This document shows, one piece after another, positions 30,969 to 44,995 of a DNA stretch of 64,000 bases. Numbering within the stretch: position 1 is the first letter of the stretch; every line of letters begins with the position of its first letter. The notes beneath the pieces were generated by a model. The model was not told the origin of the DNA, made no database searches, and saw nothing but the letters and a program-made list of their open reading frames with translations. The position numbers were made by a program, and so were the translations under genes. The stretch covers positions 328,329 through 392,328 of IMG/VR virus record IMGVR_UViG_3300029893_000001; one strand, given 5' to 3'.

Positions 30969-31400
30969 TAGTTTCTTCCGAGAAAGACCCTAGTACCTAT
31001 TTACAGACCCTAGCCGTCTTTTTTTTTTCTAAACTGGGAAAGGGTTTTCCGGGACCTGGGATTTCAACTTCGCTTGTCCCAGACGAAGCGATGCTCAGTC
31101 GTCTTCCACAAGCTTCCACAAGGACTCGATCGGTTTACGTTCTCCCAACGTGCAGCGATATCTCTCACCTCCCGTGCACGTGAATTCTACGTACGGTGTG
31201 TACGAGCCCCACTGCCCCACGGTCCAGCCAACCGAGTGAATCGTTTCGACCGTCACCTCTAGCTCGCCCACCTTGTACGTCTCGCCTACCTCAAGCATGC
31301 GTCAGTCTCCTACTCTCCCCGCCCCGAGCGTCGCACGAACCCACTCCCGAACTCAAGCAGTTTCTAGGAACTCAGTCCCCTACTACCCAGTTTACCGGGT

Positions 31401-31577
31401 GCCCCAAAATCCATTTTGGATTTTGGGGCGTGAAAAACCCCCGGAGGGTTTTTCACTGGTTTTTGCAAAGCAAAAACCAACGCATTTTGCCGGGTAGGCA
31501 AAATGCGAGGCCCATTTTGCTCCGGGCAAAATGGGCGGGAGGCCGTTCGCTGGATTTTCCCCGGAGGAAAATCCAGC
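31401..31577. repeat. Tandem array of six perfect palindromes (10-13 bp arms with A/T tracts)
   Basis: 31401-31429, 31430-31456, 31457-31479, 31481-31507, 31510-31536 and 31549-31577, each checked base by base. Confidence 0.95.
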
Positions 31578-31588
31578 CCTTAACGGCC

Positions 31589-31620
31589 GACTGGCCCGGG
31601 GCTTTTGCCCCGGGCCGGTC
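31589..31620 (-). terminator. GC-rich hairpin after the lipoprotein gene, followed by GGCCGTTAA
   Basis: GACTGGCCCGGGGC-TTTT-GCCCCGGGCCGGTC. Confidence 0.7.
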
Positions 31621-34241: not shown

Positions 34242-34401
34242 CTCCCAAAGGGAAACTGGAATCCGTACTCAATCACTTGTCCGACTTCGTTGTCGGGGTG
34301 TCTTTCGGGACCACACGATTCCCGCTTCTACGCCGAAGCTCCACGAAAGATCGTATGTTTCCAGCGTCCCTTTGGGAGCCCGATTTTTCGGTGAATCGGG
34401 C
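34242..34401 (-). ncRNA. Candidate structured RNA
   Basis: Perfect 12-bp stem 34242-34253/34367-34378 enclosing several short helices, plus an 8-bp hairpin 34378-34401; intergenic. Confidence 0.5.
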
Positions 34402-34767: not shown

Positions 34768-34892
34768 GATTATTCCTCCTGGGCCGGAGCCCGTTGCCCC
34801 GACTAGTATCGGCCGGGTTCGGCCGACTAGGGAATTAAACGCGCAACGGCTGCGAGATTTCTCGCAGCCGTTGCTTGTGTAGAGTCAGTGGG

Positions 34893-38702: not shown

Positions 38703-38917
38703 GAGCGAGGCTCGGAGCCGGAATCCGAGATTAGTCTGTTTTCGCCTCTTGGCCTAGCTCCGCCTCCGTGCCTAAACCTACACGGCCAGCCTCTACACTA
38801 GGTTGCAGACGAATCCAGGGTCTAGCCGCTTTTGCCTTGGATGACTAGTCCTCGGCGCTTGCACCCACGGGGGCGTCACCCCTTGGGGTATCTGGATTCC
38901 GGCTCCGAGCCTCGCTC
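38703..38917 (-). ncRNA. Candidate 215-nt structured RNA closed by a perfect 24-bp stem
   Basis: 38703-38726 is the exact reverse complement of 38894-38917; starts 17 nt after promoter 38934-38949; multi-helix interior. Confidence 0.7.
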
Positions 38918-39023: not shown

Positions 39024-41505
39024 CTAGTAGGCCCGGCTCACCACCGGAAGCCCACGCAGTTCCTCGACTATTCCCTTGAAGGCGACCTCGACCTCGCCGG
39101 TGTCGGGCAGCTCGACCGTGCGATCGATTCCGTAGAGATCCTCCAGGAACTCCCGGAATCCAGGCGTGTCGCCGCGGAACGGCTTGTTGAGAAGCCACTC
39201 CGCGAACTCTTCTCGGCGATTCCAATCCAGATCCTTGGCGACCTGCGTACCGATTGCCACCCCGAGGATACAATATCCTCGGACATCCCAACGATCGATG
39301 AACGACCTCGCGCTGCTGTCGCTCGAAAAGACTCGACACGAGTAGTGCACGTGCCAGTAGCCCCACTTCGCCGCCGGCTCGCTCTCCCTCACGTCGTCCA
39401 TGGAGGCGTAGGAACCCATTTCCGGGCCCCACCCATCCGACGACGGCATCGCCCTGACGAACGTATGGGCACTGTCGTAGCGATTTCGGATGAAGCTGCC
39501 GTCCGGCATCTTGAAGGCGTTGATCTGGTGGCAGTGCGGGTGCTTGAGATCCTCCTCCAGCGACTGCTTTGCGCTCTCGACGCTGCGCTCGCAAAAGAAC
39601 CTCCACGAGAGCACCGCGCTGATGAGCCGCTGCCAGACCTTGTGAGAAATCTTGTTGTTCATTGTTCTGCCCTCCTCGCTCTAACTATTATCGTCGTCGA
39701 CTACGATCCGATGCTCCCCATTCGCGGCGCATGCTGAATCACGTAGGAGACGCCGGTCAAAACCCAGCCAGCGGGAGTGTGGCCGTAGATGTTCACGCAG
39801 AACGTGAACACCAACACGGCGACGATGACGTACCACCTCTTGAGGGTTTCCACGATTGATTGACCTCCTCTCGCCGAACTATTATCGACGGGGTTCGCCG
39901 TCATATCGAGAACGACGAAATGCCCTCCGGGACTTACCGGAGGGCATTTCGTCAGGATTCCACGATCTTGCCGGCGTCGAGATCCACGAAACCGATGTGG
40001 ACGTACTTCCAGCCCGTGCTTCCAATGAGCGTGGGCGAATCCGGGAGACGCTCCGGAGCCTCGGCGAACGTGCAGCCCTCTCCGACGAGCAGGAACGCCA
40101 AGTGGCCGAATCCAGAGGAATCCACCGCCGCGTTTTGGTAGGCTGCCCAGCGAGTTCGCTCGCGCTGTCGAGCGCGCATTTGGCTCAGGACTTCCTCGTC
40201 GATTTGGAGATCATTGGTCGTCATCATGTCCCTCAGTACAGGTTCACGTAGACGCTATCGCCCACGATTTCCATCGCGTCCCGGACCTTTTGGGCCGCGT
40301 TCATTTCCTCGACTTCGCAGCGATCCCACGTCGCTCTCTGGTCGAGCACGTCGCGGAGAGCAGCCGGCGTGACGAGCACCACTTCGGTGTCGCCCCAGGT
40401 GAACGCGTTGGTGATGAGTTCCGAGACGATCTCGTATTCCTCTTCGGAGAGGAACTCCGAGAGCGTGATGAACTGGCACTCGAAAAGCGTCGGTCGCTTC
40501 ATGGCCTCCTTTCGGTCGCAGTCTTCGCAGTTGCCTGGACCGCGAAACTCGAAGACAGTCGGACTGATTTCCTGGCCACACGTCTTGCAATGATATTCGG
40601 CCATGTTTTTCTCCTCGCCTATTATTATCGACGGGGTTCGTGGTAACGACAAACGCAGAATAGGCCCCGAGTTTCCCCGGAGCCTATCTCTCTCACTTGT
40701 TCCTGAAGTACGTCTCGTACCCGATGTCCTTGGTGGACATCAGATTGTGCTTGAGATTCATGGACTCGCCGCTGAGCATGCGGCGCATTTCCTTCTCGCT
40801 GACGAAATCCACCCACTTCTCGTCGTGTTCGGGCCGAATCATGTGGTAGTTCTCGGGGTGAGAGCCCGTCGAATCGTAGTCGGTCCACTTCATGATCTGT
40901 TGCGTGGTCCATCCGACCGCCGGCATTCCGGTCATGTCGTAGCACCCGCGATTGACCAATTCGGTGGCCACCACTTCGTGCCCTTCGATGACCAGCTTGA
41001 CGATCGGCCAGTCCTCGGGATCGAGAACGTTGTCGCTGAGTCGGGCGTAGAGAATCGGCTTTCGCATCTTACCTCCTCGTTAAACGCGAAAAGGCCCCTT
41101 TCGGGGCCTCTGCTATTCCTCGGGAGCAAGTAGCAGCATGGTTTCGGCGGCGTGAGTCAGCGCACCCCACTGGAGTGCTTCCTCCTCGCACACCGCCTTG
41201 TACGCGCGTTGAAGTACACGCAGAAGCACACGCTGCTCGAATTGAATCCGAGCCTCGCCGATCATTTCGTCGAGGGGCGGGCCCTCGTCGTTGTAGTAGG
41301 CGATGCACGCCGGCTTCATCTGCGGGAACGTCTCGCAGTACAGCCAGTCGAGCACGCTCTTGTATTCGTCTTCCCTCGGAGGGGCGATCTTTCGCAGCGC
41401 CTTGGCGTGTTTGCTCGTGCGGAGCCACGCCTCGACCTCCGGGAAGAGGCTCGACGTGAGAGGCCCTCGAACGACGCAAACGCACACCATCTGGAGAGCA
41501 CTCAT
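39024..41505 (-). other. Early-region hypothetical ORFs
   Basis: 39024-39662, 39952-40227, 40233-40604, 40693-41067 and 41113-41505, mostly with clear GGAGG/GAGG RBS. Confidence 0.7.
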
Positions 41506-41531
41506 TATTCACCTCCTCGCCATTATTGAAT

Positions 41532-41604
41532 TGACCCCAACGGGATTTGAACCCGTGTTCTCGCCGTGAAAGGGCGGCGTCCTAGGCCACTAGACGATGG
41601 GGCC
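41532..41604 (-). tRNA. tRNA-Glu (TTC), no encoded CCA
   Basis: GGCCCCA-TC-GTCTAGTGGCCTAGGAC-G-CCGCC-CTTTCAC-GGCGA-GAAC-ACGGG-TTCAAAT-CCCGT-TGGGGTC-A; own promoter 41620-41635. Confidence 0.95.
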
Positions 41605-41882
41605 GTGTCCTCGCCGATTACTATCGGCGGGGTTCACTTCTTTCCGTGGGTGGACTCCCACCATTTCAGATACTCGTAATCCTTTCGGTCGAGCATCCGA
41701 TAATAGGACTCGGGGTCCGCGTCGAGTTGGTATTCATTCTCAGCGGCGTTTTGGTCGACGCCAGGAAATGTCTCCTCGTACCTGACTCGTCGATTTTTCT
41801 TACGCTGTTTCTGCTGTCGTCGCCGTCGCATGGGATATTATTCCTCGGGTTAACGCCGAATAGGCCCCGAAAGGCCATCGGC

Positions 41883-42830
41883 AGAAGCGAATCGCAGTGG
41901 GGAGGCCTACAGAGGCGGATAAAGGCAAACCAATACCCGGAACCCTCGGTTCCGACGGGATTCGAACCCGCATCACCGCCGCACCTGGTGCCACAGGACG
42001 CCCACTAGACAGCTCCGCGTTGGCACTCACGGAACGTTCATCGTAGGTCCCTGTAAGCCGCCCCACTGCGATTCGCTTCTTGGTTATTGTTTCCGCAGAT
42101 TCAGTTTCCTCCGCCCTGCGCTGCGGCTCAATCTGAGTGACCATGAGAAGGGAGTGCAGTATTCGTTAGCCTCGTTGGAGATAGTGTGCCCTTTGACTGC
42201 CGAGGGTGCAATAGCAATCTGCACCTAAACATAGGCCCGGCAATCTACAGACGATAGTCCAGCGAAGCACCGAACAATGCGTGTAACCTACGCGATGGTC
42301 AAACAATCGAGATGAGTACGAAAGGGAGTTAATTGGCGAGTCAAGGCGTCCTCCTAACGAGACTCTTTTGGGCCAGCTTTCGCTTTTAAGTGGCGTGGAG
42401 GTACGACACAATCTGCAACGTCCAGTAGCAGAAGCCCTGCCCTTGTACTCAGAACATTATCCAGCATATGCTGGAAGCGAATGGCTATGTTCCTTCGCCA
42501 CCCGTTCCCCTTGAGCCGCCTTTAGCGGACGCTCATTGGTCCTATCGGAAGCCTAGGCACATCTTGCCCAAGATTCCAATAGTATCAATTCAATCTCCGA
42601 GCGGTCCAGCCAGGGGGACCGATCCCTGCCACGAACTTAGCGGCGGCGCGTCATTCGTGGCTATATAGTCTCGAAGTGGTTACGACTCTTGCCCGACAAG
42701 TGTCGCAGCAATCAACTGGTCCAGGGGAAGGATTCAGTTGAGTAGGTATGCTTAGTTGCTTCTTGGCGGGTTTCCTACTAAACCCAGCCAGTCATAAGCT
42801 GTAGAACAGGAGAATCATTTCCAGTCCTCC
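41883..42830 (-). ncRNA. Candidate large (about 950 nt) structured RNA with a 3' circularly permuted tRNA-like module
   Basis: Largest gap without a credible ORF; many hairpins; 20-bp perfect stem 41883-41902/42061-42080; canonical T arm GCGGG-TTCGAAT-CCCGT at 41955-41971; 5' boundary uncertain. Confidence 0.7.
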
Positions 42831-42877
42831 GGCTGTGGGATTCATTAAACGCGAAGAGGGGCCCGAAGGCCCCTCTT

Positions 42878-43432
42878 CTATGCGTCCACCATCGCCCGAC
42901 GGCTCCAGTAGAGGATTGCCTTGGCGAAATCCTCCGCCGAATAGGTGGCCGGCGTTCCTCCGGGGAGACCCAGGAAGTTGCGGGCCATCGCCATCGGAGT
43001 CTGGGGCTCCGGCTCCTCGGTGGGGCGGGCGTTGATCGAGACGATCTCCCACTCGCATTCCGTCGAGGCGTCGTTGCCGAGAACGTCGTGCCTGTAGAGC
43101 ACGATCTCGACGACCTTCGCGGGAGCCTTCTCGCCCTTCGCACGCACCTCGATGTAGGGCTCCTCGCCCTCTCGCCGCGCCGAGAACGTCGCCCGGAGCG
43201 TCGTCTTCGGAGTGACCTCGATGACGCCACACTTGAAGTAGTGCGCCTGACTCTCGGTCATCGGGATGAGCAGAACGCCGTCGCGGTAGCCCGGCTTCGC
43301 CTCGGAGAACTGCTGCTCGACGAAAGCGATGAGCACATCCCACTTCGCATCGTGGGTGGCGATGAAGTGTGAGAAGGGGCTCTCCGGCGTCTGGCGACGC
43401 ACGAAGTCATTGATTCCGATGAGGTTACCCAT
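42878..43432 (-). CDS. DUF3228-like protein
   Basis: FVRRQ..., Y/FxARRxxExP, IVLYRHDVL, WEIVSI, EPQTPMAMARNFLG..GG..Y...ILYWS pattern; promoter 43466-43481. Confidence 0.7.
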   Translation of the reverse strand: MGNLIGINDFVRRQTPESPFSHFIATHDAKWDVLIAFVEQQFSEAKPGYRDGVLLIPMTESQAHYFKCGVIEVTPKTTLRATFSARREGEEPYIEVRAKGEKAPAKVVEIVLYRHDVLGNDASTECEWEIVSINARPTEEPEPQTPMAMARNFLGLPGGTPATYSAEDFAKAILYWSRRAMVDA

Positions 43433-44280
43433 GATTGATTCGGCCTCCCTTTGCCTCGCCAAACTACTATCGATTGGGTTCAGTCCCTCTCGATCGCGGA
43501 GAAGTCTCCCAGGTTCCACGTGGTGTGAGTGGGCTGCATGATGCCGAGAACCTGAGTTCCGTAGTTCTTCTCGTAATCCCAGGTGTTGAAGTCGCCCCGC
43601 GACTGAGCGTAGGCAGCGATGACAGCCTCTCGTGGAGAGCACGAAAACGTCTGCTCGTGGCAGGTGGCGAGGTTGAGGACAGTGGTGAACATGATTGATT
43701 TCCTCCTCTCATTAAACGCGAGAAGGGGCCCGAAGGCCCCGTTCTTAGTGACTCCAGGAGCGACGCACACCCTTCGAGAGGCGGCGAATCATTCGCTCCT
43801 CCTGAGCGATGACCTTCCTGGCGACCGGATTGAAATCGCGCAGGTCATCGCGCGTTGGGTAGATCCGGTCGATGTCCAGTCCGAATCCCCTACCGCTGTG
43901 ATGGCTGAAGAGACTTACATGACCAGGAAAAGCCATCGTCTCGATGTAGTGTCCAATCACGACTGTCGAGATCGTGACGTGCCGGGTCTTGCACCACGTG
44001 CGGTACTCCGGACGAAAGAGATCCCAGGACTTCGGGATGCGCCGTCCGTACCACCGGATGATCGGCTGCTTGAAGACGACCTTCGTGACCCTCTGGACCT
44101 GACCGTCCTTGTGGGTGATGATCTCGGTGGAGCGCCGGAGAGCGCCGGAGAATGTTGCTCATGATTGATTGCCTCCTCTGATTGATTGCCTCCTCGCTCA
44201 ACTATTATCGGCGGGGTTCAGCGTTCTCTTAAACGCGAGAAGGGGCCCGAAGGCCCCTCGTACGCAGCTCACTTAGTGAG

Positions 44281-44904
44281 CTAGTTGGTCTCCGAAGGAG
44301 GCGGCAGGACAGCCGATGGCCTTCGGGGAGACGCCCACTTTTCCGCGGCCTGTTCGATGTTGCCATCCGTCAGGGTGCCGACTTCCATCCTGATGAAGTG
44401 CATCGCCTCATTTCGGTAACGATCTGCTTCGAGCGAATCGCAGAAGACCTCGACGAGATTCTTCGCGTCGGCCAGACCGAGGCCGTGCATCTCGCGGGCC
44501 TTCTTGATGGCGGGGATCTTCCTGCCAGTGTTGTTCGGACCTCCGACCACCGCCATGAACTTCGCGGCGGGATCGAGATCCTTGACGGGGAAGGGGCACT
44601 GCTTTCCGATGTTGCCTCGGATGCGATCGTTGTCGTACTTGAGGCGACCGTTCTCCTGTCGGAGCGTCGCGATCTCTTCGCGCTGAAGAGCCACGGTCTT
44701 GTTCATGTGAGACCACTCACAGACCATCGCCGACGCATCGGCGTGGATCGACTCCAAGAGCGACGAGGCGCCGAGCACCATCGCATAGATGGGCACCAAC
44801 ACCAGGTTGAAGGGCTCGTCCTCGACCTGTTCCTTGAGACGGTCCGCGGCGTCTCGGACCATCGTCGTCAGGATCTCCAGGTTCTTCACGAACGTGTCGT
44901 ACAT
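44281..44904 (-). CDS. Protein containing a ribosomal bL12 (L7/L12) C-terminal-like domain
   Basis: RKIPAIKKAREMHGLGLADAKNLVE versus the bL12 consensus KIxVIKxVRxxTGLGLKEAKxLVE; N-terminal coiled coil. Confidence 0.75.
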   Translation of the reverse strand: MYDTFVKNLEILTTMVRDAADRLKEQVEDEPFNLVLVPIYAMVLGASSLLESIHADASAMVCEWSHMNKTVALQREEIATLRQENGRLKYDNDRIRGNIGKQCPFPVKDLDPAAKFMAVVGGPNNTGRKIPAIKKAREMHGLGLADAKNLVEVFCDSLEADRYRNEAMHFIRMEVGTLTDGNIEQAAEKWASPRRPSAVLPPPSETN

Positions 44905-44995
44905 TACCAATTCCTCCGGGCCAGAAGTTGGCACTTAGTATCGCCAGGGTCCAACCCCTTAAGCAAGAAAAGGGCGGCCCCGAAGGACCGCCAAT

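What the first reader, a model, noticed from the sequence alone, without database searches (positions are those of the whole stretch)
42081..42830. About 750 nt of hairpin-dense non-coding sequence: possible giant phage ncRNA
Seen: in a window where gaps are normally short, this stretch has no credible RBS-led ORF beyond an 8-codon MILLFYSL. The minus strand holds a chain of helices: TGGC-GGGTTT/AAACCC-GCCA, TCAACTG/CAGTTGA, GCCACGAA/TTCGTGGC, GGTCC/GGACC, ATCTT/AAGAT, CCGC/GCGG, TCCAGCATATGCTGGA, GC-GAAA-GC and CCGCAG/CTGCGG. It runs directly into the tRNA-like module and is bracketed by hairpin elements at about 42845 and 41850. Established: GOLLD and ROOL are several-hundred-nt phage-associated RNAs found next to tRNA genes, and GOLLD can embed tRNAs. 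Inference: a GOLLD/ROOL-like or new class of large RNA of about 950 nt. I could not match it to a known consensus by eye.
Basis: partly seen in the sequence, partly recalled or inferred. Interest (0 to 1): 0.82.

Follow-up and report, generated by a model that had tools for sequence, protein, structure and literature searches.

The report
Orphan structured non-coding RNA stretch
A 1-kb gene-free stretch of a 392-kb phage genome is predicted to fold, on the transcribed strand only, into several stable RNA domains ending in a tRNA-mimicking stem module, but it matches no known RNA family and has no relatives to test it against, so it is a candidate new phage RNA and not a proven one.

Summary
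Window 41832-42877 is a 1,046-nt gap with no coding signal in any frame, even if one stop codon were recoded. Folding beats dinucleotide shuffles on the minus strand (z -3.7 with 150 shuffles, against -1.9 on the plus strand). Three sub-domains carry the signal: 42680-42455 (z -4.9), 42311-42127 (z -4.2) and 42100-41840 (z -8.8). The stretch ties for the most structured 750 nt of the genome, but it ties with a coding region.

The GOLLD and ROOL models find nothing in the whole genome. No homologue exists in any collection searched, so no covariation test is possible. No RNA run was listed as holding the stretch. Predicted long-range helices are weak, so the fold looks like a chain of domains, not one compact RNA.

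The "tRNA-like module" is a 31-bp stem closing a T-arm plus adjacent hairpin. That is the design of Y RNAs (YrlA). The phage encodes a Ro60 protein and at least 8 YrlA-like RNAs elsewhere, but this module fails both YrlA models.

Verdict: a real, orphan, probably transcribed structured region. Its status as one large RNA and its function are unproven.

The parts
42853..42878 (-). Terminator-like GC hairpin (11 bp, UUCG loop) just after the DUF3228 stop codon. It marks the 5' boundary of the non-coding stretch.
   Evidence: Pair probability 1.00. Two further near-identical copies lie near 43725 and 44242, each with the same conserved tail CGCGTTTAA. At the 43725 copy a ribosome-binding site and ATG follow within about 20 nt, so the hairpin need not stop transcription.
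42792..42830 (-). GGAGGA followed by the 8-codon mini-ORF MILLFYSL.
   Evidence: Coordinates. The SD-to-ATG spacing resembles the real gene starts that follow the other two hairpin copies. Whether it is translated is unknown.
42681..42848 (-). 5' segment with three local hairpins, including GGGUUU/AAACCC and UCAACUG/CAGUUGA.
   Evidence: z -2.08 on the minus strand and -1.92 on the plus strand, so the signal is modest and not strand-specific. The individual hairpins have probability 0.97-0.98.
42455..42680 (-). Hairpin-cluster domain. It contains the 9-bp GCCACGAAU stem, a 9+8-bp compound hairpin at 42582-42542, and the UCCAGC-AUAU-GCUGGA palindrome.
   Evidence: z -4.92 on the minus strand (0 of 200 shuffles as good) against -2.64 on the plus strand. 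The MFE structure equals the centroid structure.
42313..42451 (-). Predicted 139-nt multi-branch domain containing the GC-GAAA-GC hairpin.
   Evidence: It folds no better than shuffles: z -1.16 on the minus strand and -1.38 on the plus strand.
42127..42311 (-). 185-nt long irregular hairpin made of about 9 stacked helices.
   Evidence: z -4.24 on the minus strand (0 of 200) against -1.47 on the plus strand (17 of 200). MFE equals centroid, and pair probabilities are 0.89-1.00. Against it: 2 of the 3 SNPs seen in a landfill variant turn predicted G-C pairs into A.C.
42093..42126 (-). CCGCAG/CUGCGG hairpin.
   Evidence: Pair probability 0.89.
41883..42080 (-). 31-bp near-perfect stem (42080-42049 pairing with 41914-41883) enclosing about 135 nt. 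The insert holds a consensus T-arm (41971-41956), an adjacent 6-7-bp hairpin (41953-41939) and a UUGGU D-loop-like stretch. This is a Y-RNA-style tRNA mimic.
   Evidence: The inverted repeat is 30 nt at 93%. z is -8.76 for 42100-41840. Folding energy is -119.8 kcal/mol on the minus strand against -96.4 on the plus strand. Rfam tRNA scores 19.2 bits (gathering score 29) and YrlA scores 16.3 bits over model positions 31-62 only (gathering score 69). Ensemble probabilities are 0.93 for the T-arm and 0.99 for the adjacent hairpin.
41855..41882 (-). Terminal hairpin between the stem module and the ribosome-binding site of ORF65.
   Evidence: Pair probability 0.97.
41634..41831 (-). ORF65, a small protein with an arginine-rich N-terminus (MRRRRQQKQRKKNRRVR...). 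It is the first gene downstream.
   Evidence: Positive codon score (0.162 per codon) and a Shine-Dalgarno site. Translation. No Pfam match. It is the only member of its protein cluster.
41532..41604 (-). tRNA-Glu(UUC), the next RNA gene downstream on the same strand.
   Evidence: ARAGORN and Rfam tRNA at 57.7 bits.

Best explanation
The 1,046-nt gap is a non-coding segment that is read on the minus strand together with its neighbours. Its RNA folds into a chain of autonomous structured domains, not one compact molecule.

Three domains are strongly and strand-specifically stable: 42680-42455, 42311-42127, and the stem module at 42080-41883. The stem module is a 31-bp duplex closing a T-arm, an adjacent hairpin and a D-loop-like stretch. 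That is the layout by which Y RNAs (YrlA) mimic tRNA.

My preferred mechanism is as follows. The long perfect duplex and the tRNA mimic are processing signals, for host RNase III and/or tRNA-processing enzymes. Cleavage there would cut the upstream structured RNA free from the ORF65-tRNA-Glu part of the transcript. This would give the upstream RNA a defined, protected 3' end, as the mascRNA element does for MALAT1. The released RNA or RNAs would belong to the unusually large RNA toolkit of this phage: 44 tRNAs, a tmRNA, Ro60 and at least 8 Y-like RNAs.

Shown: absence of coding, strand-specific excess folding, the anatomy of the stem module, and Ro60 plus a Y-RNA family in the same genome.

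Inferred: transcription, processing, existence of a discrete stable RNA, and any function.
For: Non-coding.

Orientation: all neighbouring genes and both nearby tRNAs are on the minus strand.

Excess folding on the minus strand: with much weaker plus-strand values. Energies are -119.8 against -96.4 kcal/mol for the stem module.

The upstream hairpin is a repeated intercistronic element that is followed directly by a gene start elsewhere, so read-through transcription is plausible.

Stem-module anatomy.

RNA toolkit of the phage: the Ro60/Rsr orthologue matches 2NVO over its full length at E 2.9e-21 and Pfam vWA_Ro60 at 3.7e-14. The YrlA-like paralogues show compensatory changes in 15 of 23 predicted pairs.

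Five long near-perfect inverted repeats exist in the genome, where I estimate about 0.25 would be expected by chance. Three of them lie in window 34-42 kb, near tRNA-Met and tRNA-Glu.
Against: No homologue was found anywhere: GenBank phages, IMG/VR seeds, JGI metagenome seeds, the only collinear relative G001, whose contig ends before this locus, or a second Ro60 phage. So there is no covariation or conservation evidence.

Every other assembly of the locus is 100% identical.

No RNA run was listed as holding it.

A protein-coding region reaches the same running-mean z.

One sub-domain and the 5' segment are not significantly structured.

Long-range helices have probability of only 0.25-0.33.

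2 of the 3 SNPs in the one variant break predicted G-C pairs.

No sigma-70-like promoter lies at the 5' end.

The phage encodes no RNase III.

The stem module fails the Rfam YrlA model and the phage's own Y-RNA model.
Confidence: 0.42

Rival explanations
1. A passive intergenic spacer that has accumulated independent hairpins (terminators, mRNA stabilisers, processing sites). There is no function as a unit and no discrete large RNA. Only the stem module and the hairpins at the ends matter.
For: The predicted architecture is beads on a string with weak long-range helices. Two of the five segments fold no better than shuffles. The boundary hairpin is a repeated intercistronic cassette. Other hairpin clusters exist in gaps of the same window, for example 31400-31620. 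A coding region can reach the same z.
Against: 770 nt is very long for a spacer in a genome whose called genes in this locus are mostly 3-340 nt apart. Two internal domains of 185 and 226 nt have z below -4 on the transcribed strand only, which is not expected of simple terminators.
Confidence: 0.3
2. Evolutionary debris: remains of decayed genes or of an RNA island (dead tRNA or Y-RNA genes) with no present function.
For: It is an orphan sequence in a hypervariable accessory arm whose neighbouring proteins also have no homologues. G+C is lower than in the flanks. The tRNA-like core scores below the tRNA threshold and looks like a degenerate tRNA. SNPs break predicted pairs.
Against: There is no residual coding signal in any frame. 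A 31-bp near-perfect stem and strand-specific folding are not expected to survive neutral decay.
Confidence: 0.17
3. A diverged member of the GOLLD or ROOL families.
For: Only the context fits: a phage, adjacent tRNA genes, a length of about 0.8-1 kb, and a tRNA-like element attached, as in some GOLLD loci (10.1101/2024.12.08.627333).
Against: No match to either covariance model in the locus at E<=10 or in the whole genome at E<=10.
Confidence: 0.02
4. A DNA-level element, such as a replication origin, a packaging site or a mobile element with terminal inverted repeats, and not an RNA.
For: There are many hairpins, one perfect 16-nt palindrome and a 30-nt inverted repeat. Lengths and terminal-repeat sizes resemble miniature transposons.
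Against: Folding excess is much stronger on one strand, which needs G.U pairs and so points to RNA. There are no iterons: direct repeats are 9-19 nt, mostly two copies, at chance level. GC skew shows no inflection here. The five long inverted repeats share no sequence, so they are not copies of one mobile element.
Confidence: 0.05

Closest known systems
GOLLD (RF02032) and ROOL (RF03087) large phage RNAs
   Same: Phage-encoded, several hundred nt or more, no coding capacity, next to tRNA genes, with a tRNA-like element attached. Their function is also unknown.
   Different: No sequence or structure match to either model. No evidence of the multi-pseudoknot compact architecture. No family: only a single sequence is known.
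YrlA-type bacterial and phage Y RNAs (RF02553), partners of Ro60/Rsr
   Same: Applies to the 3' module only. The 5' and 3' ends form a long stem, and the enclosed domain has a T-arm immediately followed by a hairpin and then a GG-containing D-loop-like stretch. The phage encodes Ro60 and a covarying family of YrlA-like RNAs.
   Different: The stem is a perfect 31-bp duplex. It lacks the motifs GAAUGC, GACUACAU and CCUGUC, which are invariant in the six aligned YrlA-like paralogues, and it lacks their internal loop. An extra insert of about 85 nt is present. It scores 16.3 bits against a gathering score of 69, and 12.6 bits with the phage-specific model. It lies about 240 kb from rsr, whereas published YrlA genes lie within 4 kb of it (PMC4201824).
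MALAT1/MEN-beta with mascRNA (RF01684): a tRNA-like element that defines the 3' end of a long non-coding RNA
   Same: A long non-coding RNA is followed directly by a tRNA-like acceptor/T-arm fold that could recruit RNase P or RNase Z. cmscan lists a weak mascRNA-type match here (16.3 bits).
   Different: mascRNA is a eukaryotic nuclear system. The match is far below threshold (42.5 bits). Here the ensemble prefers the hairpin arrangement over an acceptor stem. The analogy is to mechanism only.
Canonical tRNA (RF00005)
   Same: A consensus T-arm (GGUUCGAAUCC) and a possible 6-bp acceptor stem. The T-arm and 3' acceptor strand are identical to those of some bacterial tRNA-Asp genes and to the T-arm of the phage's tRNA-His.
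   Different: 19.2 bits against a gathering score of 29. There is no D stem, no 7-nt anticodon loop and no CCA. ARAGORN finds it only at a relaxed threshold, as a 90-nt oddity.

Membership tests
GOLLD (RF02032) | Match to the covariance model of the conserved 3' domain (gathering score 150 bits). | tested here: not met
   No hit at E<=10 in the locus or anywhere in the 392-kb genome.
ROOL (RF03087) | Match to the covariance model (gathering score 99.1 bits). | tested here: not met
   No hit at E<=10 in the locus or in the genome. The control genomes also gave nothing, so the tool's sensitivity for ROOL was not demonstrated.
GOLLD/ROOL | Phage or prophage location near tRNA genes. | tested here: met
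   The record is a 392-kb virus genome. tRNA-Glu lies about 280 nt downstream of the stem module, and tRNA-Met lies about 4.6 kb away.
GOLLD/ROOL | Homo-oligomeric nanocage assembly. | not testable with these tools
   This needs cryo-EM or native gels of the transcript.
YrlA Y RNA (RF02553) | Full-length match to the model, including the Ro60-binding stem. | tested here: not met
   Only model positions 31-62 match, at 16.3 bits against a gathering score of 69. Elsewhere in the genome, full-length hits reach 61.7 and 54.8 bits.
YrlA-like family of this phage (model R1) | The conserved motifs GAAUGC, GACUACAU and CCUGUC, with a covarying basal stem. | tested here: not met
   With filters off, the target matches only the T-arm plus hairpin at 12.6 bits (E 0.19), no better than the T-arms of real tRNAs. 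A motif scan finds 8 elements, none in the window.
YrlA Y RNA | Long terminal stem enclosing a T-arm, an acceptor-like hairpin and a D-arm mimic, in that order. | tested here: met
   Helix table and pair probabilities. cmscan alignment of the two adjacent hairpins. The D-like UUGGU follows the hairpin, as in the paralogues. The D-like part is weak.
YrlA Y RNA | Gene located next to rsr (within 4 kb in PMC4201824) and RNA bound by Ro60. | tested here: not met
   rsr is at genome coordinates 95509-97185 and the target is at about 370.2 kb. Binding itself is not testable here.
tRNA (RF00005) | Cloverleaf scoring above the gathering score. | tested here: not met
   19.2 bits against 29. ARAGORN finds it only with -ps80.
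tmRNA, group I and II introns, RNase P, 6S, OLE, HEARO and all other Rfam 15 families | Any match at E<=10. | tested here: not met
   cmscan of 41400-43100 on both strands lists only tRNA-type hits and chance hits. The genome has a separate canonical tmRNA.
Protein-coding gene or pseudogene | An open frame, codon bias, or a residual frame signal. | tested here: not met
   JGI calls no gene here.

The most novel reading that the evidence does not exclude
The stretch encodes a new class of about 0.8-1 kb phage structured RNA. Its 3' end is set by a Y-RNA/tRNA-mimic stem module, and it works together with the phage's Ro60/Y-RNA and tRNA machinery. It might, for example, be a scaffold, decoy or substrate in RNA quality control or translation takeover. 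That would make it a third kind of large phage RNA beside GOLLD and ROOL.
Probability: 0.2. Interest if true: 0.75.

Novelty: new variant of a known kind. Interest (0 to 1): 0.45.

Why it matters
Large structured RNAs of phages (GOLLD, ROOL) are among the least understood RNAs. Each new class near tRNA islands would widen that puzzle. Here the candidate sits in a huge phage that also carries Ro60 with an array of Y-like RNAs, 44 tRNAs and a tmRNA, so it could link large phage RNAs to RNA quality control.

The evidence is thermodynamic only and rests on a single sequence. Its practical value now is as a well-mapped target for RNA-seq, Northern blotting and structure probing, and as a seed for structure-aware searches when relatives appear.

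Tried and rejected
1. Recoding. The phage has a tRNA(CUA), but all frames contain TAA, TAG and TGA stops.

2. Decayed gene. No residual frame signal was found.

3. Known RNA families. Rfam gave nothing at gathering threshold or at E<=10. GOLLD and ROOL gave nothing genome-wide.

4. Second tmRNA, or a tRNA interrupted by an intron. ARAGORN gives only low-threshold artefacts.

5. Synteny route to homologues.
- Homologues of the DUF3228 neighbour are cellular (Patescibacteria-type contigs) with unrelated neighbours.
- The L7/L12-like protein, the 288-aa protein and the 212-aa protein have no real homologues.
- The PolA route gave one collinear relative, whose contig covers only genome positions 143-322 kb.
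- The Ro60 route gave an unrelated 33.6% G+C phage.

6. Direct DNA routes. These were blastn against GenBank phages, nhmmer within the genome and against the relative, exact seeds in IMG/VR, and exact seeds in JGI metagenomes, which gave only chance 20-mers.

7. tRNA origin or host. A seed in GTDB genomes hit only Anoxybacillus tRNA-Asp. The same T-arm is also found in the phage's own tRNA-His, so it is generic.

8. Population variation. Four other assemblies are 100% identical. One landfill contig of 235 nt carries 4 differences, 3 of them visible.

9. Expression. No RNA run was listed as holding the stretch.

10. Replication origin. GC skew shows no inflection here.

11. Phage RNase III. None was found.

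12. Long-range 9-nt and 12-nt complementarities. By my estimate they are at the number expected by chance, so I did not use them.

Full report
**Setting**

The window is the last 64 kb of a 392,328-bp IMG/VR virus record from subsurface metagenomes. ARAGORN finds 44 tRNAs in the genome, including a tRNA with anticodon CUA, plus a tmRNA. Around the finding, all credible genes lie on the minus strand.

Read on the minus strand, the layout is:
- a DUF3228 gene (43432-42878; Pfam E 5.7e-10);
- a GC hairpin (42878-42853);
- about 770 nt without genes;
- a 31-bp stem enclosing a tRNA-like core (42080-41883);
- a small hairpin (41882-41855);
- a 65-codon ORF with a Shine-Dalgarno site (41831-41634);
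- another hairpin;
- tRNA-Glu(UUC) (41604-41532).

**Is it non-coding?**

Yes.
- All six frames carry 8-21 stops, and every frame has all three stop codons, so suppression of one codon cannot open a frame.
- Every ORF of 20 aa or more inside the gap has a negative codon score and no ribosome-binding site. The flanking ORF65 scores +0.162 per codon, equal to the mean of the small called genes.
- A sliding codon score that ignores stops shows no residual frame between 42860 and 41880. Both flanking genes stand out clearly in the same scan.
- JGI's own annotation calls no gene there.
- The 8-codon MILLFYSL ORF (42818-42792) follows GGAGGA at a spacing like that of real gene starts behind the two other copies of the boundary hairpin. 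Whether it is translated is unknown.

**Is it structured beyond chance?**

For 42845-42081:
- The tool gave z -6.8 on the minus strand and -1.8 on the plus strand, with only 20 shuffles.
- My own Altschul-Erickson shuffles gave -3.3 and -2.2 with n=60, and -3.74 and -1.91 with n=150 (0 and 3 shuffles as good). I take about -3.7 as the fair value.

Native sequence in this genome folds better than shuffles everywhere (mean z -0.8 per 150-nt window), so I scanned the whole genome on the minus strand.
- The target ties for the lowest 750-nt running mean: -3.32, against a mean of -0.80 and sd of 0.66 over 2,612 positions.
- The tie is with a protein-coding region near 306.8 kb.
- About a dozen loci reach -3.0.
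- So the stretch sits at the top of the distribution, not outside it.

Cutting the stretch at its predicted domain borders is more informative (200 shuffles each):

| Segment | z, minus strand | z, plus strand |
|---|---|---|
| 42848-42681 | -2.1 | -1.9 |
| 42680-42455 | -4.9 | -2.6 |
| 42451-42313 | -1.2 | -1.4 |
| 42311-42127 | -4.2 | -1.5 |
| 42100-41840 | -8.8 | not run |

- For the stem module, folding energy is -119.8 kcal/mol on the minus strand against -96.4 on the plus strand.
- Two internal domains and the stem module are therefore strongly structured in a strand-specific way. That argues for selection at the RNA level on the transcribed strand.
- The helices that would join the 5' hairpins into one body have probabilities of only 0.25-0.33.
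- The prediction is a chain of domains, not a compact giant RNA. Pseudoknots and tertiary contacts are invisible to this method.

**Is it a known RNA?**

No.
- Rfam 15 gives only the two real tRNAs at gathering threshold in the whole window.
- At E<=10 over 41400-43100 it adds only a sub-threshold tRNA hit (19.2 bits), YrlA (16.3), mascRNA (16.3) and noise.
- The GOLLD and ROOL models find nothing in the entire genome at E<=10.

**Relatives**

None could be found.
- GenBank phages gave no blastn match.
- The adjacent proteins are either cellular-type or orphans. DUF3228's best hits are about 64% identical, sit on bacterial contigs with housekeeping neighbours, and are named Uhrbacteria or Falkowbacteria by their sources. 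The other neighbours have no homologues.
- The PolA fusion protein retrieved one true relative, G001 (62% identity). It is collinear with genome positions 143-322 kb, but its contig stops before this arm. blastn and nhmmer find nothing in it.
- Exact seeds found nothing related in IMG/VR or JGI metagenome contigs.
- Four other assemblies of the locus are 100% identical.
- One landfill run holds a 235-nt contig with four differences. Of the three that are listed, one is unpaired and two change predicted G-C pairs of the 185-nt hairpin to A.C. That is weak evidence against that helix, unless the unlisted fourth difference is compensatory.
- No RNA run was listed as holding the stretch.
- Covariation and expression, the two decisive tests, therefore remain undone.

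**The tRNA-like module, re-read**

- Its T-arm is a perfect consensus. A 6-bp acceptor pairing is possible, but there is no D stem, no 7-nt anticodon loop and no CCA.
- In the ensemble, the 3' acceptor strand pairs instead with the sequence just downstream (GGAACC/GGUUCC, probability 0.99). This gives a T-arm immediately followed by a hairpin, inside a multiloop closed by the 31-bp stem.
- That arrangement is exactly the part of the Rfam YrlA model that it matches, positions 31-62. A UUGGU stretch follows where YrlA has its D-arm mimic.

This led to a check for Ro60.
- The phage encodes a 558-aa Ro60/Rsr orthologue at genome 95509-97185.
- The genome holds a family of YrlA-like RNAs on the same strand between 97 and 127 kb. 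Rfam scores reach 61.7 bits. Six aligned paralogues share invariant GAAUGC, GACUACAU and CCUGUC motifs, with compensatory changes in 15 of 23 pairs. A motif scan finds 8 of them, and my covariance model finds further short ones.
- Phage YrlA genes next to Ro60 are known (PMC4201824).
- The target module is not a member of this family. With filters off, the phage-specific model matches only its T-arm and hairpin at 12.6 bits, no better than real tRNAs.
- Its stem is a perfect duplex without the conserved internal-loop motifs.
- It shares the design, but membership is not shown.

It is one of five long near-perfect inverted repeats in the genome (18-28 matched bp, loops of 71-167 nt). I estimate about 0.25 would be expected by chance. 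They share no sequence with one another, and all fold better on the minus strand.

**Mechanism**

The best-supported reading has four parts.
- The stretch is transcribed with its neighbours. The boundary hairpin is a repeated intercistronic element, not a strong terminator.
- It folds into autonomous domains.
- It is separated from ORF65 and tRNA-Glu by processing at the long duplex and/or the tRNA mimic.
- The phage has no RNase III of its own, so a host enzyme would have to do this.

None of these steps is shown. The rivals are a passive hairpin-rich spacer, debris of an RNA island, and a DNA-level element. They are weighed in their own sections of this report. The DNA-level reading is disfavoured by the strand asymmetry, by the lack of iterons and by a GC skew without inflection.

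**Verdict**

This is a real, non-coding, strand-specifically structured orphan stretch. It is not GOLLD or ROOL. Whether it is one large RNA, and whether it has a function, is unproven. Interest is moderate, and would be higher if transcripts or relatives are found.

Noticed in passing
Outside the window: genome G000:C1:95509-97185 (minus), locus L058:811-2487: The phage encodes a full-length Ro60/Rsr orthologue of 558 aa with TROVE and Ro60-vWA domains and a DVSGSM MIDAS-like motif. Its best solved relative is D. radiodurans Rsr (2NVO, E 2.9e-21).
   Followed up: yes
Outside the window: genome minus strand at 97217-97349, 97574-97716, 109479-109612, 117312-117457, 120201-120335, 120341-120475, 125281-125466 and 126725-126876. 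Short model hits also at 116365-116409 and 126361-126433.: An array of at least 8 YrlA-like Y RNAs is scattered through the tRNA island over about 30 kb. They share invariant GAAUGC, GACUACAU and CCUGUC motifs and a covarying basal stem. All score below Rfam's gathering score (best 61.7 of 69 bits). This many Y-RNA paralogues in one phage looks unusual.
   Followed up: partly
Outside the window: genome 97640-97713 (minus): The 'tRNA-Ile(GAU)' called by ARAGORN just upstream of rsr lies inside a full-length YrlA-like match (31.4 bits). It is probably the tRNA-mimic domain of a Y RNA, with an anticodon-arm-like insert, and not a tRNA.
   Followed up: partly
window 34242-34378 and 38703-38917; genome 2985-3099 and 125473-125633: Four further long near-perfect inverted repeats (20-24 bp stems enclosing 71-167 nt). 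They are unrelated in sequence to each other and to the target's stem, and all fold better on the minus strand. The one at 125473-125633 abuts a Y-like RNA. What they are is unexplained. They could be RNase III-type processing stems or small-RNA precursors.
   Followed up: partly
window 42853-42878, about 43720-43745 and about 44237-44262: Three copies of the same hairpin (GGGGCC-UUCG-GGCCCC core) share the conserved tail CGCGTTTAA on the minus strand. Two are followed directly by a ribosome-binding site and a gene start, so this is a repeated intercistronic cassette.
   Followed up: partly
window 31400-31620 and 34836-34881: A dense cluster of perfect 12-14-bp hairpins sits in a 683-nt gap. 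Separately, the motif AACGGCTGCGAG forms a hairpin at 34836-34881 and also forms the outer arms around the 34242-34378 stem. 150-nt windows here reach z of -6 to -7 on both strands.
   Followed up: no
window 41634-41831 (minus): ORF65, directly downstream of the stem module, begins with an arginine-rich stretch (11 of its first 17 residues are Arg or Lys). This is reminiscent of arginine-rich RNA-binding peptides. It has no homologue in any database searched.
   Followed up: no
window 42878-43432 (minus): The closest homologues of the DUF3228 gene (about 64% identity) lie on bacterial contigs next to SecDF, Clp or trigger factor genes. Where their sources name them, the names are Candidatus Uhrbacteria or Falkowbacteria. 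This may hint at gene acquisition from, or a host among, Patescibacteria.
   Followed up: partly
window 44281-44934 (minus): A 217-aa protein with a weak ribosomal L7/L12 C-terminal domain match (Pfam E 2.4e-6). It has no homologue among 5.8 billion proteins.
   Followed up: no
Outside the window: genome 105653-105726 and 130644-131041: The genome carries a tRNA with anticodon CUA (a possible amber suppressor, labelled Pyl by ARAGORN). It also carries a tmRNA with the tag ANNVVSLFGNVVANDNGTAEPLPLAA.
   Followed up: no
Outside the window: genome about 306.6-309.0 kb, compared with G001 about 12.6-12.8 kb: Relative to its only collinear relative (IMGVR_UViG_3300009702_000016), this phage has about 2.4 kb extra between tRNA-Ser and the next shared gene. 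The extra DNA carries small genes and two tRNA-Gln. One of its coding genes (306679-307395) folds as well as the target by the z-score scan.
   Followed up: partly
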